Shown here piece by piece: positions 28-30,700 of a stretch of DNA of 64,000 nucleotides (positions are counted from its first letter, which is position 1; each line of letters opens with the position of its first letter). Position numbers and translations under genes: made by a program. Source of the stretch: Auanema rhodensis (Eukaryota > Animalia > Nematoda). The notes under the pieces are model-generated. The model was not told where the DNA came from. It saw nothing but the letters and a program-made list of their open reading frames with translations, and did not search any database. Where the stretch lies: the NCBI GenBank assembly GCA_964057225.1, contig OZ059897.1, forward strand, positions 10,478,001-10,542,000, written 5' to 3'.

Positions 28-99
28 GCCCAAGTAATATAGTGGTTAGTACTCCACGTTGTGGCCGTGGCGACACAGATTCGATTCCTGTTTTGGGCA
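28..99 (+). pseudogene. Degenerate tRNA-His(GTG) copy (G10A, G53A, C66T); representative of the majority class, probable pseudogene or weak allele
   Basis: Same 72-nt frame, but with A10.C25 and A53.C61 mismatches, which alter both internal Pol III promoter boxes (TAG->TAA; GGTTCGA->GATTCGA). Loss of function is inferred, not shown. Confidence 0.7.
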
Positions 100-23300: not shown

Positions 23301-23931
23301 TTGTGGCCGTGGCGACACAGATTCGATTCCTGTCTTGGACATTTTTTGTTTTGAAATTAAAATGCTATAAAATTATTGCTTGCTTGTCATGTTAGATTTC
23401 TTTAATTTGAATACTTATTTAAGTTATAACAATTTTCGATTTAATCACGTTCAATCAACTGTATTGTTTTCAAAAATAAAGACAAAATTCAATTTCTGTT
23501 CATTGAATTAGAATTTTCATGTTGTCACACAGAAATTGAAGAATCTTAGTTCAATTCAGTAACAATGAACACACTAACTTTGTTAAGTTGTTGTAATATC
23601 GGCCCAAGTAATATAGTGGTTAGTACTCCACGTTGTGGCCGTGGCGACACAGATTCGATTCCTGTCTTGGACATTTTTTGTTTTGAAATTAAAATGCTAT
23701 AAACATATTGCTTGCTTGTCATGTTAGATTTCTTTAATTCAAATACATATTTAAGTTCTAACAATTTTTGATTTAATCACGTTCAATTAACTGTATTGTT
23801 TTCAAAAATAAAGACAAAATTCAATTTCTGTTCATTGAATTAGAATTTTCATGTTGTCACACAGAAATTGAAGAATCTTAGTTCAATTCAGTAACAATGA
23901 ACACACTAACTTTGTTGAGTTGTTGTAATAT

Positions 23932-23940
23932 TGGCCCAAG
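23932..23940 (+). repeat. Target-site duplication, left copy TGGCCCAAG (tRNA positions -2 to +7)
   Basis: The identical 9-mer flanks the element on both sides and occurs once per uninterrupted T-2 unit. Confidence 0.96.
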
Positions 23941-24165
23941 GGCCAAACTAAATTGACATGTGTGAAAATGACTCGATATGTAATTGACATAGTGAAATAT
24001 ATTGGTTTAATTGACATGTAAGATCAATACCGTATTGAATGTTAATGACATTGTAATAATGACATTAATTGCGTTTGACTAAAATGTGCAAATTTGAATA
24101 TTGCGTACCAATTTAGGTAATTTTTTCACAAAAAAATTTTGGGATTTTCCGATATCGATTCATTT
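23941..24165 (+). repeat. Left terminal inverted repeat (225 bp)
   Basis: Reverse complement of 27466-27690. There is one mismatch across nt 14-225 (nt 126) and 7 mismatches in nt 1-13. Confidence 0.97.
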
Positions 24166-24186
24166 TTTCCCAATAGAAGAAAGGAA

Positions 24187-27100
24187 ATGAAGCCGGTTTC
24201 GAAAAAAATGCTGTTGCAATTTTTCAATGACAGGTAGATCAGATGGTTTTGTTTGTTTTGTTTACACATTCTCACATTCAAAGAAATTATAATGTAATGG
24301 AAGAGCTTCCGCGTTTGAAATATTTTCCTGCTGGTGATACAGTTTATTTGGTAGCTTCGAGCAGCTTCAGAGATTTGAAAGATGTGACAACTGATTCGGC
24401 ATCTCCATGGACGGGAAAACTAAGTTTGAATTGTTATATGTTTTATTTTTTTAATTGTTACGTAGTTTATGACGAAAAATCGCACCGTGATTTGAAAACT
24501 AATATTGAGTACTTATATGTGGATAAAACGGATGAGCAATGGATACCTGTTAAGAAGTCTTATTTAACTTTCAAATTATTCCTTAATACTAACCCCAGAT
24601 ACCCTTCTTTACAACGCCGTGTTAGTTATTTTTGTCAATAAAATGTTTTTATATTCTATCTTTACACAGGTGGGAGTAATTCTGGACATGAATAAAAACG
24701 CTGTCTCTCCAATTTTATACTACTACTTTGCTGAAGTAAGGTTTTCATTATTTTTATGTTCACATGATTACTTGGATCTCTATTATTTGTATTTCATAAT
24801 ATTCAGGAGAACCTCACAATATCCCCATCAAACTCGATTCGAATCAAACCATCTGAATCAGCTGCTGCTAAAAAAGCGTTATCTCATCGAACTACCGTGG
24901 GAGCAAAAAGATTTCTTGATGAACAGGGATTAAATATTAATACAAAAAAAGTCATTACAGTTCACTAATCAAAATTATGTATTATTTTTCAGTTAACAAA
25001 TTTAGCCCGTTCCGTCGATTATCATATAAAAAGTAGAGTAGGAAAAAAAAGTGCATCGAATGTTGCAAAACTGTTTGATCGGTTTGTTTGCAAACCCAAT
25101 TCATTAGAAGCTATGCTTTCTCCACATGTTGAAAAAACAGGTTTATGTAAATTAGTAGTATTCATGACCTTAATCAGTCTTTTAGAAGATGGAAAAATAT
25201 TAATACGTCAGATATTTTTTTACCCGTGTGCCTTAGAACATTTTTGTAAAACTTTGCCTGACAAAAACGATGTTATCGAACATAGAAATAGAGTTGATAA
25301 ACTGCTACTAACAACTAAAGAAGATGCAGAACTGGAGCTGAGTGAGCATGAAGATGTTTTTTAGGTTTAATGAGTTTATTGTAGACAGAATTATTTCAAC
25401 AACTAATAAATCAGGAACAATTCCCAAGCTGGGTTCGATGTTGCAAATTGATACTACTTTTAACGTTTGTAGCAGTGAATATTTAACAATGGCCGTAGGA
25501 ATACACGATACTTTTTTGTGAGATTTCACAAACTATTTTGAAATGTAATATATTTAGAAATAATGTATCTGGAAAATGCGCAAGTGTATTAATTGGAGCT
25601 ATGATACATACAAGTAAGGCTGCCAAAGAACATGAAGCATTCTCAATAGCGTTGAATAGTCAGTTTGAGAAATTCGGATCAAATAAAACTATTCCTTGCG
25701 TAATCACTGATGGAGAGGAGTCGTTCAAGTTGTACACTACAGTAAGTACTGTTGAACTTGTGGAATCATTAAAGTTAGTTTAGGGTTCGTTTCTAAGTAG
25801 ATCAGTACCTTTGCGATGTGACGTACACAAGTTTGACAACTTGAAGATGAACATGCACAAATCGGATAGAGAAAATACAGAAATTATCAAAAAAAAATTA
25901 TTTGGATCAAAAGAAAATGTAGGCACGTAAAGTTTTAATTGAGTTGAAAAGTATATTTTAAGAGTATCAGTGGAACTATATGGCACCGCGGTATATTAGG
26001 AACTCTTCAGAAATCTGAATTTGAAAAAAAAATGATGAAATTTAGTGATGCTGTACATGCTGACACAGCAAAATGGTGGGTTAATATTCAACATTTTTTC
26101 CTTGTGTTTGAATAAAAACAAAGCATGATATTTGTAAGCATACTAATATAGATATTATAAATTGTGCTGAGAGAAAAATAGAATTGTTGTTTAGGTTACT
26201 TCGAAATATGGATGATATGTACAACACATGTTCACTTATCAAGAAGCTCTACGCTGGCTGTCCTTTGCAATGGGCCACAACAAATATCATCGAGTTGAGA
26301 AATAACCAACTCAAAAAAATTGTACAATATCCTCAACCGGCGGAAATACTAATGAAAAGTTTATTAATTATACATCATGGTACTTTTTTCAAATCACATT
26401 TAGATGATACCACAGCACTGTGTTCTAATAAGTTAAATATTTACAGATGATATGAAAGAACGCATATTTGCTATTCAGAACAAAAGCCAAAATTTAAAAA
26501 CTGCAATTCCGTTGAACATGAATTTTGAAGATCTTTCTTGTTCGGAGCAGAGAACTTTAGTAGAGAAATTTGGATTATATAGCTATTATATTTCTTTATC
26601 TTATTTTAAGTTTCCGAAATGGACATTAGACGGTAAGAAAAAGTTAATAACTATTCATTATACTAAATAATAATAGGAGATGGCAAAAATAAATCAAACT
26701 TTTTGTCAGCTGTAGAGAAACTCTCTGTTGATAGCTGCAGAAATGATGAGAATTTATATATAGTTCTAGATGAAATCGATCTGAGAAGGTATTCGATTTT
26801 TCAGTGAATAATGAATTATTTTTTAAGACCCGTTTGCGTGAAAAAAACGGAGAACCAACTCAAATGTTTTCATTACGAATGTTTAAATAACATTAATTAT
26901 GGATATTATTTCTGTATACATATGTGAGGTTTCAAAAGATATTTTGAAAGACAATTTTATTTTTAGGTTCGCTATTCTTAAAAAACTTGAAGATTCAGTT
27001 GCAGATCACTATATAAAAGAGATGGAAGATAAAAAAAATAATAGAACAGCGCAGAACTGTTTGAGTAAACAAATACGACCCACAGATGGTTCGAAGTTCC

Positions 27101-27414
27101 AAAACCGTAAAGGGAGACAATATTCAAAAAATAATTATAGTAGGCAAATTGCAGAAACTAAGTTAAGTTGTATATAAAACAGTTGTCTTAACATTTTTTT
27201 CAGTATATCCTTTCTTGAAGACACAAGTGAACTGCATGAGATTATTTTTAGTGACAGATCCAATTACTCCGATGATAGCTCAGAGAATTTAATCACGAAC
27301 ACTTTTACAGAAGACAGAATAGTTTCGCCTCCACTAGAATATACGTCTTTGAACAACTCTCAACCATATCAAGATAATGAATCAATTTTCTGGTTTCCAC
27401 CTAGTTTTGAATAA
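24187..27414 (+). CDS. MULE-type DDE transposase, predicted 801 aa, 17 exons
   Basis: Manual exon model: 24187-24233, 24284-24423, 24466-24620, 24670-24735, 24807-24950, 24993-25140, 25186-25341, 25385-25517, 25558-25741, 25784-25926, 25971-26075, 26195-26379, 26447-26632, 26677-26788, 26828-26923, 26967-27161, 27204-27414. Total 2,406 nt, all introns GT-AG, phases consistent, no internal stop. Motifs: LQIDTTFNV (D308, 25450), VITDGE (D381, 25709), LRCDVH (CxxH, 25817-25828), WATTNIIELRNNQLK (E507, 26292), and C-x4-C-x10-C-x-H (26865-26921). Exon 1 and the two in-frame stop-free introns (2 and 6) are the least certain parts. Confidence 0.88.
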
Positions 27415-27425
27415 TTTTCATGGCT

Positions 27426-27431
27426 AATAAA
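27426..27431 (+). promoter_or_regulatory. Putative polyadenylation signal of the transposase gene
   Basis: AATAAA 11 nt after the predicted TAA and just inside the right TIR boundary. The AT-rich background lowers specificity. Confidence 0.55.
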
Positions 27432-27465
27432 ATTTAATTTTAAAGTACAATCCTATTATTCTGTG

Positions 27466-27690
27466 AAATGAATCGATATCGGAAAATCCCAAAATTTTTT
27501 TGTGAAAAAATTACCTAAATTGGTACGCAATATTCAAATTTGCACATTTTAGTCAAACGCAATTGATGTCATTATTACAATGTCATTAACATTCAATACG
27601 GTATTGATCTTACATGTCAATTAAACCAATATATTTCACTATGTCAATTACATATCGAGTCATTTTCACACATGTCATTCTGACTTTACC
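27466..27690 (-). repeat. Right terminal inverted repeat (225 bp)
   Basis: The reverse complement reads GGTAAAGTCAGAATGACATGTGTGAAAATGACTCG...GATATCGATTCATTT, matching the left end. Confidence 0.97.
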
Positions 27691-27699
27691 TGGCCCAAG
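27691..27699 (+). repeat. Target-site duplication, right copy TGGCCCAAG
   Basis: Directly follows the terminal CC of the right TIR. Confidence 0.96.
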
Positions 27700-27764
27700 T
27701 AGTATAGTGGTTAGTACTCCACGTTGTGGCCGTGGCGACACAGGTTCGATTCCTGTCTTGGGCA
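27693..27764 (+). tRNA. tRNA-His(GTG), canonical copy regenerated by the target-site duplication directly downstream of the transposon
   Basis: The TSD supplies T-2, G-1 and G1-G7. The rest is canonical (G10, G53, CTTGGGCA) and is followed by T6. Confidence 0.95.
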
Positions 27765-30700
27765 TTTTTTGTTTTGAAATTAAAATGCTATAAAATTATT
27801 GCTTGCTTGTCTTGTTAGATTTCTTTAATTTGAATACTTATTCAAGTTATAACAATTTTCGATTTAATCACGTTCAATCAACTGTATTGTTTTCAAAAAT
27901 AAAGACAAAATTCAATTTCTGTTCATTGAATTAGAATTTTCATGTTGTCACACAGAAATTGAAGAATCTTAGTTCAATTCAGTAACAATGAACACACTAA
28001 CTTTGTTAAGTTGTTGTAATATCGGCCCAAGTAATATAGTGGTTAGTACTCCACGTTGTGGCCGTGGCGACACAGATTCGATTCCTGTCTTGGGCATTTT
28101 TTGTTTTGAAATTAAAATGCTACAAAATTATTGCTTGCTTGTCATGTTAGATTTCTTTAATTTGAATACTTATTTAAGTTATAACAATTTTCGATTTAAT
28201 CACGTTCAATCAACTGTATTGTTTTCAAAAATAAAGACAAAATTCAATTTCTGTTCATTGAATTAGAATTTTCATGTTGTCACACAGAAATTGAAGAATC
28301 TTAGTTCAATTCAGTAACAATGAACACACTAACTTTGTTAAGTTGTTGTAATATCGGCCCAAGTAATATAGTGGTTAGTACTCCACGTTGTGGCCGTGGC
28401 GACACAGATTCGATTCCTGTCTTGGACATTTTTTGTTTTGAAATTAAAATGCTATAAACATATTGCTTGCTTGTCATGTTAGATTTCTTTAATTCAAATA
28501 CATATTTAAGTTCTAACAATTTTTGATTTAATCACGTTCAATTAACTGTATTGTTTTCAAAAATAAAGACAAAATTCAATTTCTGTTCATTGAATTAGAA
28601 TTTTCATGTTGTCACACAGAAATTGAAGAATCTTAGTTCATTTCAGTAACAATGAACACACTAACTTTGTTAAGTTGTTGTAATATTGGCCCAAGTAGTA
28701 TAGTGGTTAGTACTCCACGTTGTGGCCGTGGCGACACAGGTTCGATTCCTGTCTTGGGCATTTTTTGTTTTGAAATTTAAATGCTATAAAATTATTGCTT
28801 GCTTGTCATGTTAGATTTCTTTAATTTGAATACTTATTCAAGTTATAACAATTTTCGATTTAATCACGTTCAATCAACTGTATTGTTTTCAAAAATAAAG
28901 ACAAAATTCAATTTCTGTTCATTGAATTAGAATTTTCATGTTGTCACACAGAAATTGAAGAATCTTAGTTCAATTCAGTAACAATGAACACACTAACTTT
29001 GTTAAGTTGTTGTAATATCGGCCCAAGTAATATAGTGGTTAGTACTCCACGTTGTGGCCGTGGCGACACAGATTCGATTCCTGTCTTGGGCATTTTTTGT
29101 TTTGAAATTAAAATGCTACAAAATTATTGCTTGCTTGTCATGTTAGATTTCTTTAATTTGAATACTTATTTAAGTTATAACAATTTTCGATTTAATCACG
29201 TTCAATCAACTGTATTGTTTTCAAAAATAAAGACAAAATTCAATTTCTGTTCATTGAATTAGAATTTTCATGTTGTCCCACAGAAATTGAAGAATCTTAG
29301 TTCAATTCAGTAACAATGAACACACTAACTTTGTTAAGTTGTTGTAATATTGGCCCAAGTAGTATAATGGTTAGTACTCCACGTTGTGGCCGTGGCGACA
29401 CAGGTTCGATTCCTGTCTTGGGCATTTTTTGTTTTGAAATTTAAATGCTATAAAATTATTGCTTGCTTGTCATGTGAGATTTGTTTAATTCAAATACTTA
29501 TTTAAGTTCTAACAATTTTTGATTTAATCACGTTCAATTAACTGTATTGTTTTCAAAAATAAAAACAAAATTCAATTTCTGTTCATTGAATTAGAATTTT
29601 CATGTTGTCACACAGAAATTGAAGAATCTTAGTTCATTTCAGTAACAATGAACACACTAACTTTGTTAAGTTGTTGTAATATTGGCCCAAGTAGTATAGT
29701 GGTTAGTACTCCACGTTGTGGCCGTGGCGACACAGGTTCGATTCCTGTTTTGGGCATTTTTTGTTTTGAAATTAAAATGCTATAAAATTATTGCTTGCTT
29801 ATCATGTTAGATTTTTTTAAATTTGAATACTTATTCAAGTTATAACAATTTTCGATTTAATCACGTTCAATCAACTGTATTGTTTTCAAAAATAAAGACA
29901 TCTTTCAATTTCTGGTCATTGAATTAGAATTTTCATGTTGTCACACAGAAATTGAAGAATCTTAGTTTAATTCAGTAACAATGAACACACTAACTTTGTT
30001 AAGTTGTTGTAATATCGGCCCAAGTAATATAGTGGTTAGTACTCCACGTTGTGGCCGTGGCGACACAGATTCAATTCCTGTCTTGGACATTTTTTGTTTT
30101 GAAATTAAAATGCTATAAAATTATTGCTTGCTTGTCATGTTAGATTTCTTTAATTTGAATACTTATTCAAGTTATAACAATTTTCGATTTAATCACGTTC
30201 AATCAACTGTATTGTTTTCAAAAATAAAGACAAAATTCAATTTCTGTTCATTGAATTAGAATTTTCATGTTGTCACACAGAAATTGAAGAATCTTAGTTC
30301 ATTTCAGTAACAATGAACACACTAACTTTGTTAAGTTGTTGTAATATCGGCCCAAGTAATATAGTGGTTAGTACTCCACGTTGTGGCCGTGGCGACACAG
30401 ATTCGATTCCTGTCTTGGACATTTTTTGTTTTGAAATTAAAATGCTATAAAATTATTGCTTGCTTGTCATGTTAGATTTCTTTAATTTGAATACTTATTT
30501 AAGTTATAACAATTTTCGATTTAATCACGTTCAATCAACTGTATTGTTTTCAAAAATAAAGACAAAATTCAATTTCTGTTCATTGAATTAGAATTTTCAT
30601 GTTGTCACACAGAAATTGAAGAATCTTAGTTCAATTCAGTAACAATGAACACACTAACTTTGTTAAGTTGTTGTAATATCGGCCCAAGTAATATAGTGGT

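What the first reader, a model, noticed from the sequence alone, without database searches (positions are those of the whole stretch)
23932..27764. Candidate tRNA-gene-targeting Mutator element whose TSD rebuilds the tRNA it hits
Seen: the element lies between nt 7 and 8 of a tRNA-His gene, just before the A box. The 9-bp TSD spans -2 to +7, so a complete gene (G-1, A box, B box, terminator) is restored downstream and only the upstream flank is replaced. The copy hit is one of the roughly 20% canonical ones. Known: Pol III gene targeting is established for Ty3/Ty1, Dictyostelium TRE elements and Dada DNA transposons. I do not know it as a standard property of long-TIR MULEs. Inference: this family may target active Pol III start regions as a safe haven. 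With one insertion, chance or general open-chromatin preference is not excluded.
Basis: partly seen in the sequence, partly recalled or inferred. Interest (0 to 1): 0.82.

Follow-up and report, generated by a model that had tools for sequence, protein, structure and literature searches.

The report
Mutator-type transposon targeting Pol III genes
A young cut-and-paste jumping gene of the Mutator type sits at the very start of a tRNA-His gene, and its two sister copies and at least ten independent relatives in the same nematode-like genome also sit at fixed places inside tRNA and 5S RNA genes, a targeting habit so far described only for retroelements and the unrelated Dada transposons.

Summary
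The window is one 332-bp tandem array of 182 tRNA-His genes. It is interrupted once, by a 3,750-bp element (23941-27690) with 212-nt perfect inverted repeats and a 9-bp duplication covering -2 to +7 of a canonical tRNA-His gene.

The single-insertion caveat is now lifted. The genome holds two more copies, 99.6-99.9% identical, with different duplications: -9..-1 of another tRNA-His gene and +9..+17 of a 5S rRNA gene. I fetched the 20 best-ranked diverged relatives (32-54% protein identity). Nineteen lie in or beside small-RNA gene arrays. In all, 13 independent insertions have perfect 9-bp duplications inside Pol III genes. Nine are at the 5' end (-9..+25). Four are just before the B box, or at +67..75 of 5S.

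Target sequences differ within one family, so the position is recognised, not a DNA word. The rebuilt tRNA is incidental, because other copies truncate their gene.

Pfam models are blank. However, a confident model of the catalytic core matches IS256/MULE folds best, and the motifs, long repeats and 9-bp duplications agree. I found no published report of this for Mutator elements. This scan had already reached the same reading on other DNA of this genome.

The parts
23934..23940 (+). orphaned 5' fragment (nt 1-7) of the interrupted tRNA-His gene, inside the left copy of the duplication
   Evidence: compared with intact units
23932..23940 (.). left 9-bp target site duplication TGGCCCAAG (-2..+7 of tRNA-His)
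23941..23953 (+). left 13-nt tip (starts GGCC), unlike the right tip but identical in all three copies
23954..24165 (+). left long terminal inverted repeat, 212 nt
   Evidence: 100% complementary to 27466-27677
24297..27414 (+). multi-exon transposase gene, from ATG at 24297 to TAA at 27412-27414. It has short nematode-type introns.
   Evidence: The same exon order is conserved in all relatives and in the Auanema protein P0001.
25441..25461 (+). first catalytic Asp motif (LQIDTTF)
25700..25720 (+). second catalytic Asp motif (VITDGEE)
25814..25840 (+). CxxH motif (RCDVHKFDN)
26277..26318 (+). catalytic Glu motif (TTNIIELRNNQLKK), of IS256/MULE type
26865..26921 (+). SWIM-like zinc-finger pattern C-x4-C-x10-C-x-H
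   Evidence: The Pfam SWIM model does not score it.
27466..27677 (-). right long terminal inverted repeat, 212 nt
27678..27690 (-). right 13-nt tip (reverse complement starts GGTA)
27691..27699 (.). right 9-bp target site duplication TGGCCCAAG
27693..27764 (+). complete canonical tRNA-His(GTG) gene downstream of the element, followed by a T-run at 27765-27770

Best explanation
The element is a young, probably autonomous cut-and-paste DNA transposon. It belongs to a divergent nematode branch of the Mutator (MULE/IS256) superfamily, whose members in this genome integrate preferentially into RNA polymerase III genes at defined positions.

Shown: (a) the anatomy of the element; (b) three near-identical copies at the 5' ends of two tRNA-His genes and one 5S gene, with unrelated 9-bp duplications; (c) ten more independent insertions of diverged relatives inside tRNA-His, Gln, Gly, Arg and 5S genes. 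These fall into two position classes: -9..+25 at the gene start, and just 5' of the B box (tRNA +39..+50, 5S +67..+75).

Inferred: one transposase hits different sequences at like positions of different Pol III genes. The target is therefore read as a feature of the assembled Pol III transcription complex, or of the DNA it distorts (TFIIIB/start site for one class, the TFIIIC or TFIIIA internal promoter region for the other). It is not read as a DNA word. Multicopy Pol III genes then serve as a safe haven. In this copy the duplication spans +1, so a whole tRNA gene remains behind the element; that outcome is incidental.
For: Anatomy of the element.

Three copies only, 99.6-99.9% identical, with different duplications. 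The 5S context is confirmed by Rfam.

Relatives were picked by protein similarity alone, not by context: one search found 37 diverged hits, and fetched the first 20 by rank. Nineteen of those 20 loci hold tRNA, 5S or U4 genes.

Fifteen elements have perfect 9-bp duplications inside genes, and 13 of them are independent.

The nine 5'-type sites are very unlikely to fall in one 27-nt window by chance. If insertion were uniform in the repeat unit, p is about 1e-12. If uniform within the gene plus 10 nt on each side, p is about 3e-6. The window was chosen after seeing the data and the unit lengths are approximate.

Both tRNA-His hits of this family are canonical copies (18% and 19% of local copies; joint p 0.03).

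Superfamily: the AlphaFold model of the catalytic core of the Auanema homologue has pLDDT 84.6. Its best solved match is the IS256-family ISCth4 transposase (Foldseek E 1e-7; Z 10-11.6, against 9.2 for P element and Hermes). All ten nearest ESM Atlas fold sets are MULE, FAR1, FHY3 or ZSWIM1-3, with TM 0.55-0.64 by the query for eight of them (0.38 and 0.45 for the other two). Language-model neighbours of two diverged homologues are MULE/SWIM clusters. The D, D, CxxH and TTNxxExxNxxxK motifs are present. The 9-bp duplications and long repeats starting with GG are also seen in the C. briggsae relatives.
Against: The Pfam MULE, Transposase_mut and SWIM models score neither the exons nor the full-length homologues. 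The structural model is of a homologue, not of this copy's protein.

Five of the 20 are rearranged, one-ended or fragmentary.

The 5' class spans about 35 nt and both orientations, which is looser than Ty3.

The more distant C. briggsae relatives are not in RNA genes.

There are no data on Pol III occupancy, on transposase partners or on new transposition events. Survival bias in arrays and local hopping must contribute to some degree.
Confidence: 0.78

Rival explanations
1. The transposase prefers nucleosome-free or GC-richer DNA in general, as maize Mu prefers open 5' ends of genes. In AT-rich arrays the only such DNA is the Pol III gene. On this reading the Pol III association is real but indirect, with no contact to the Pol III machinery.
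For: The spacers are AT-rich and the genes are GC-richer. The 5' class is spread over about 35 nt and has no fixed orientation. By general knowledge, Mu elements prefer open chromatin at gene 5' ends.
Against: All 13 resolved independent insertions are in Pol III genes; none is in a Pol II promoter or other open DNA. Two sharply separate position classes track element subclades. The B-box class lands within a few nt of the same place in four different genes. One duplication (GTAATATCG) is AT-rich spacer just upstream of +1.
Confidence: 0.12
2. There is no targeting. Insertion is near-random, with local hopping, and only copies in redundant tandem arrays survive selection. Array dynamics then spread them.
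For: Two of the three copies lie 90 kb apart in one tRNA-His array. L019/L020 and L021/L022 are duplicated segments with identical flanks.
Against: Selection cannot place insertions at the same few nucleotides of a 332-928 bp unit. The third copy is on another chromosome, in 5S. Relatives lie on at least five contigs, in seven kinds of gene. A 181-Mb genome offers ample neutral DNA outside arrays.
Confidence: 0.06
3. Targeting is by primary DNA sequence, as in Dada, with each family recognising a word in its target gene.
For: Dada families do this in tRNA, snRNA and 5S genes (PMC3706591, PMC8869645). The left tip of the element loosely resembles the tRNA-His 5' end (9 of 14 positions).
Against: Copies that are 99.6-99.9% identical used TGGCCCAAG, GTAATATCG and CCATACCAC. 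The B-box class used four unrelated 9-mers in Arg, Gln, Gly and 5S genes.
Confidence: 0.03

Closest known systems
Dada DNA transposons (Kojima and Jurka 2013, PMC3706591; Kojima 2022, PMC8869645)
   Same: They are cut-and-paste DDE elements that live inside multicopy tRNA, snRNA and 5S genes. Their transposases share a C/DxxH motif with MuDR, hAT, P and Kolobok.
   Different: Dada has no terminal inverted repeats, makes 6-7 bp duplications, and is 4.7-11 kb long with a transposase of about 1,400 aa. Each family recognises a primary sequence, mostly at A-box nt 8-13 or at the anticodon. The elements here have 95-470 nt repeats, 9-bp duplications, are 3.3-4.2 kb long, have a MULE/IS256-type core, and one family uses unrelated target sequences.
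Ty3 (also Ty1 and Dictyostelium TRE5/TRE3, DGLT-A): retroelements that integrate at Pol III genes (own knowledge)
   Same: Targeting is by position and independent of sequence. It applies to tRNA and 5S genes alike. For the 5' class, insertion is close to the transcription start, as for Ty3.
   Different: Those are retroelements, with integrase or target-primed reverse transcription, and 5-bp or other duplications. Ty3 is exact to 1-2 bp, whereas here the spread is about 35 nt. No partner protein is known here.
Classical MuDR/Mu and other MULEs
   Same: They share 9-bp duplications, long inverted repeats, a DDE core with CxxH, a SWIM-like finger, and the MULE fold.
   Different: Classical MULEs favour 5' ends of Pol II genes and open chromatin (own knowledge). 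I found no report of Pol III gene targeting. The Pfam MULE model does not score this clade.
C. briggsae relatives of the same clade (P0012, P0015; loci L029, L030)
   Same: About 24% identical proteins with the same motifs. Long repeats start with GGCC, and duplications are 9 bp.
   Different: The two copies looked at are not in or next to RNA genes. Targeting therefore seems to be a trait of a subclade.
Pokey (piggyBac, Daphnia 28S rDNA)
   Same: A DNA transposon using a multicopy RNA gene as a haven.
   Different: It belongs to a different superfamily and recognises a sequence-specific site in a Pol I gene.

Membership tests
Mutator / MULE (with IS256) superfamily | target site duplication of 9-11 bp | tested here: met
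   Perfect 9-bp duplications in 15 elements of this genome and in 2 C. briggsae relatives.
Mutator / MULE (with IS256) superfamily | long terminal inverted repeats | tested here: met
   212 nt at 100% here; 95-470 nt in relatives.
Mutator / MULE (with IS256) superfamily | transposase scored by the family profiles (Pfam PF10551 MULE, PF00872 Transposase_mut) | tested here: not met
   No hit for the exons or for the full-length homologues P0001, P0006, P0012 and P0013, even at E 10. The PF10551 hits in this genome lie elsewhere.
Mutator / MULE (with IS256) superfamily | catalytic core with the MULE/IS256 fold | tested here: met
   Model of P0001:230-592: pLDDT 84.6. ISCth4 (IS256 family) is the best solved match: E 1e-7, Z 10-11.6 over 220 residues, against 9.2 for P element and Hermes. 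All ten nearest Atlas fold sets are MULE/FAR1/ZSWIM1-3; TM by the query is 0.55-0.64 for eight of them and 0.38 and 0.45 for the other two. The model is of a homologue that is 36-51% identical to this copy's exons.
Mutator / MULE (with IS256) superfamily | D, D, CxxH and E in an N-x-x-E-x-x-N-x-x-x-K context | tested here: met
   Read in the window at 25441-26318 and conserved (D, D and CxxH invariant; the Glu block present in seven of eight sequences, one lacking that region) in alignment A3. That this signature marks MULE/IS256 is from my own knowledge.
Mutator / MULE (with IS256) superfamily | C-terminal SWIM zinc finger | tested here: inconclusive
   A C-x4-C-xn-C-x-H pattern is present, and UniRef names two homologues 'SWIM-type domain-containing'. 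Pfam SWIM gives no hit.
Dada superfamily | 6-7 bp duplications and no terminal inverted repeats | tested here: not met
   9 bp and long repeats here, against the description in PMC3706591.
Dada superfamily | family-specific primary-sequence target | tested here: not met
   One family used three unrelated 9-mers in two kinds of gene.
Dada superfamily | similarity to Dada transposases | not testable with these tools
   No Dada protein was available from a tool. The fold neighbours are MULE/IS256.
Pol III-directed integration of the Ty3 kind (works like, not member) | insertion at a fixed position relative to Pol III genes of different sequence | tested here: met
   Nine sites at -9..+25 in four kinds of gene. 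Four sites at tRNA +39..+50 or 5S +67..+75.
Pol III-directed integration of the Ty3 kind (works like, not member) | physical tethering to TFIIIB, TFIIIC or Pol III | not testable with these tools
   No partner is known. I sent no complex prediction, because no candidate partner sequence of this organism was in hand.

The most novel reading that the evidence does not exclude
A clade of Mutator-type DDE transposases has evolved, independently of retroelement integrases, to read the position of assembled Pol III transcription complexes. Sister subclades dock at different parts of the complex: the start site and TFIIIB side, versus the B-box/TFIIIC or 5S internal control region. This would be the first position-guided, sequence-independent, safe-haven cut-and-paste transposase.
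Probability: 0.5. Interest if true: 0.88.

Novelty: new variant of a known kind. Interest (0 to 1): 0.8.

Why it matters
Integration aimed at Pol III genes is a textbook example of how mobile elements avoid harming the host, but it is known in mechanistic terms only for retroelements (Ty3, Ty1, TRE5). Among DNA transposons only Dada is known, and it reads DNA words. A compact (about 3.7 kb), apparently active Mutator-type element would add a new case if it finds tRNA and 5S genes by position. It would be a convergent solution in a different enzyme family. It would make testable how a DDE transposase can be tethered to a transcription complex. It could also be a starting point for safe-harbour gene delivery with a cut-and-paste enzyme. 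Finally, it helps explain the state of the large tRNA and 5S arrays of this genome, which show inverted and duplicated segments around these elements.

Tried and rejected
- Pfam scans of single exons gave nothing.
- Pfam scans of the full-length homologues gave nothing beyond a sub-threshold DUF7747 hit.
The gene was searched exon by exon by reference, and through natural full-length homologues.
- The word-based protein search with P0001 found only itself.
- A profile search of the PDB by sequence found nothing.
- The full-length AlphaFold model was too poor to use (pLDDT 43). An alignment padded with many exon fragments was misaligned and I dropped it.
- Public runs hold the element only as contigs. 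Because the flanks are array repeats, the 'skipping' joints are ordinary empty units and say nothing about polymorphism or excision. No RNA run held the element.
- Rejected: that the duplication is designed to rebuild the gene. Five of the nine 5'-type insertions truncate theirs.
- Rejected: a fixed orientation relative to the gene (six the same, three opposite).
- Rejected: that the element tips mimic the target. The tRNA-like left tip matches 9 of 14 positions, and the right tip gives the 5S copy a lower Rfam score (88 against 107 bits). Neither is better than chance.
- The Auanema contig (L031) ends exactly at the element tips, so it shows no flank.
Full report
WHAT IS THERE

The window is G000:C5:10478001-10542000. 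It is a single tandem array of tRNA-His(GTG) genes. ARAGORN of them. They are spaced 332 bp apart 169 times and 333 bp apart 11 times, with one gap of 4,091 bp.

The gap holds a 3,750-bp element at 23941-27690. Its arms 23954-24165 and 27466-27677 are 212 nt long and 100% complementary. Each arm ends in a 13-nt tip, and the two tips differ: the left starts GGCC, and the reverse complement of the right starts GGTA.

The 9-mer TGGCCCAAG stands on both sides, at 23932-23940 and 27691-27699. Intact units carry it once. A complete gene with its T-run follows the element.

Only 33 of the 182 genes (18%) have the sequence of the gene that was hit. Most others carry G52A (B box), G10A or G70A.

A search of the whole assembly with the left 300 bp finds exactly three copies. 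They are 99.6-99.9% identical over their full length.

- The second copy lies 90 kb downstream in the same array region. Its duplication is GTAATATCG, which is -9..-1 of another tRNA-His gene, and that gene is again a canonical one.
- The third copy lies on contig C3. Its duplication is CCATACCAC, which is nt 9-17 of a 5S rRNA gene inside a 5S cluster confirmed by Rfam.

These are three independent, very recent insertions, all at the 5' end of a Pol III gene, in unrelated sequences.

THE WIDER CLADE

One exon (window 25499-25780, carrying the second catalytic Asp) finds 37 further places in the genome at 32-54% identity. I fetched the first 20 by rank, chosen by protein similarity alone.

Nineteen of the 20 loci hold arrays of small-RNA genes: 5S; tRNA-Leu, Gly(TCC), Gly(GCC), Arg, Gln and His; and a 5S-U4 unit. 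The relatives share the exon order of the window copy. They have inverted repeats of 95-470 nt, and their ends begin with GG.

I read the junctions against intact genes, correcting three boundaries by 1-2 nt by eye. This gives perfect 9-bp duplications in 15 elements. Thirteen of them are independent, because L019/L020 and L021/L022 are duplicated segments.

Nine are at the gene start:
- tRNA-His: -9..-1, -4..+5 and -2..+7
- 5S: -1..+8, +7..+15, +9..+17 and +17..+25
- tRNA-Gln: +3..+11
- tRNA-Gly(GCC): +2..+10

Four belong to one subclade whose tips read GG(T/C)AAACTGACAAG, and lie further inside the gene:
- tRNA-Arg: +42..+50
- tRNA-Gln: +41..+49
- tRNA-Gly(TCC): +39..+47, which is 1-3 nt before the B box
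- 5S: +67..+75

Two one-ended copies of that subclade join a tRNA-Leu just before its B box, and a 5S gene at about +72.

CHANCE AND SELECTION

Suppose insertion were uniform within the repeat unit that was hit. Nine hits within one 27-nt window of start positions would then have a probability of about 1e-12. Even if uniform within the gene plus 10 nt on each side, the probability is about 3e-6. The window was chosen after seeing the data and the unit lengths are approximate, but the margin is large.

Survival in redundant arrays and local hopping surely help. They cannot set the nucleotide position, and they do not explain the jump between chromosomes and gene kinds.

Both tRNA-His hits of this family are in canonical copies, which make up 18% and 19% of local copies. 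The joint probability is 0.03. This is a hint that active genes are the target, but no more than a hint.

WHAT KIND OF ELEMENT

Pfam does not score the exons. Instead, a profile of the exon with the catalytic Glu (A1) was run against 1.84 billion proteins. It found only 14 hits. The full-length ones come from Auanema sp. JU1783 (P0001, E 1e-33), C. nigoni and C. briggsae. P0001 aligns with the relatives here over nearly its whole length.

Pfam is blank for these proteins too, so the profile test of MULE membership is not met. Other evidence does support membership:
- An AlphaFold model of the core P0001:230-592, built with a 15-row alignment, is confident (pLDDT 84.6, pTM 0.83).
- Its best solved match is the IS256-family ISCth4 transposase: Foldseek E 1e-7, probability 1.00; Z 10.0-11.6 over about 220 residues, against 9.2 for the P element and Hermes.
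- All ten nearest fold sets in the ESM Atlas are MULE, FAR1, FHY3 or ZSWIM1-3 families, with TM 0.55-0.64 by the query for eight of them and 0.38 and 0.45 for the other two.
- Language-model neighbours of two homologues that are only 24% identical to each other are MULE/SWIM clusters.
- The window copy carries D, D, CxxH, a Glu in the TTNxxExxNxxxK context, and a C-x4-C-x10-C-x-H finger.
- UniRef names two Caenorhabditis homologues SWIM-type.

Together with the 9-bp duplications and long repeats, this places the clade in the Mutator/IS256 superfamily as a divergent branch.

The two C. briggsae elements I looked at have the same anatomy (repeats starting GGCC, 9-bp duplications) but are not in RNA genes. 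Targeting therefore seems to be a trait of a subclade.

HOW IT LIKELY WORKS

Shown: integration occurs at like positions of Pol III genes with unlike sequences, in two classes that follow element phylogeny.

Inferred: the transposase, or a host partner it binds, reads the assembled Pol III complex or the DNA it bends or opens. For the 5' class this would be near the start site, next to TFIIIB. For the other class it would be the TFIIIC-bound B-box side, or the TFIIIA-bound region of 5S. This resembles Ty3 in logic (own knowledge) but is less exact and has no fixed orientation (six the same, three opposite).

An indirect preference for open, GC-richer DNA remains the main rival reading.

The rebuilt tRNA is a side effect of a duplication that spans +1. 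The 5S sister copy loses nt 1-8, and its Rfam score falls from 107 to 88 bits. Four relatives also truncate their gene.

KNOWN OR NEW

Dada transposons also live in tRNA, snRNA and 5S genes. However, they have no inverted repeats, make 6-7 bp duplications, are much larger, and recognise primary sequence (PMC3706591; PMC8869645). That 2022 paper lists the target-specific DNA transposons as Pokey, CryptonV, CRISPR-associated transposons and Dada. It names no Mutator element.

A 2024 review states that no TE insertion within the 5S gene had been reported (PMC10946416).

Four full-text searches found no report of Pol III targeting by MULEs. Absence from this library is not proof.

This scan had already reached the same reading on other DNA of this genome, including the sister copy 49.6 kb beyond the window. 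I re-derived the reading independently here and added the structural test of the superfamily.

READS

The element is held near-identically as contigs in runs of three studies, under three organism labels. Laid on 23800-27850, the contigs confirm the internal sequence. They cannot speak to polymorphism, because the flanks are array repeats. No RNA holder was found.

Noticed in passing
window 1-64000; also L007 and L028 (C5:10588000-10708599): The tRNA-His array runs through the whole window and is still present 230 kb from its start. Only 18% of window copies are canonical. The rest carry mostly G-to-A or C-to-T changes at fixed positions (G52A in 135 copies, G10A in 129, G70A in 57, C65T in 42), so most units look promoter-weakened or decayed. 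By contrast, 11 of 15 units in L028 are canonical.
   Followed up: partly
L014, L023, L024, L010: In several relatives the tRNA-Arg or 5S array is inverted across the element, with inverted repeats of 0.4-2.9 kb made of array units. This would be expected from intramolecular or one-ended transposition into a nearby unit.
   Followed up: partly
L019/L020 (C6, 20 kb apart) and L021/L022 (C7, 20 kb apart): Pairs of elements have identical flanks and duplications. The element-bearing array segments were therefore copied by array dynamics, not by transposition.
   Followed up: partly
window 23941-23953 and 27678-27690; L009 ends: The two 13-nt tips are unlike each other, although the next 212 nt are identical. 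Compared with the closest relative (L009) and most other families, the tips of the window family sit on the opposite sides of the transposase gene. It looks as if the inner segment had flipped between the long repeats. The evidence is weak: tip matches are 8-9 of 13.
   Followed up: partly
L018 (C4:16270600-16280599): 5S genes alternate with complete U4 snRNA genes (Rfam 118 bits). A one-ended family-B element is joined to a 5S gene at about +72.
   Followed up: no
G000:C7:15995608-16077764, C7:10177450-10186967, C4:12846108-12850211: At least seven family-B copies lie within 85 kb of the tRNA-Leu array region. There are also triplets of hits spaced 4.0 kb apart (C7) and 1.94 kb apart (C4), which look like tandemly repeated elements or element parts. 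I could not fetch them.
   Followed up: no
window 27690-27691, contigs of run X9: In a run under another organism label, contigs that match the tRNA-His gene from -2/-3 onward are preceded by other, unrelated sequences. This may mean further elements or other flanks joined at the same nucleotide.
   Followed up: no
P0001 residues 39-131; window 24231-24638: The N-terminal region gives weak, sub-threshold hits to Pfam DUF7747 (24.1 bits against a cut-off of 25; E 0.04 for the window exon). This region lies ahead of the catalytic core and could be the part that chooses the target.
   Followed up: no
G000:C6:11318031-11392581, C1, C3: A different, Pfam-recognisable MULE family with intact open frames of 660-700 aa and no introns is present in at least 11 copies. 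Its insertion sites would be a useful control for the targeting claim.
   Followed up: no
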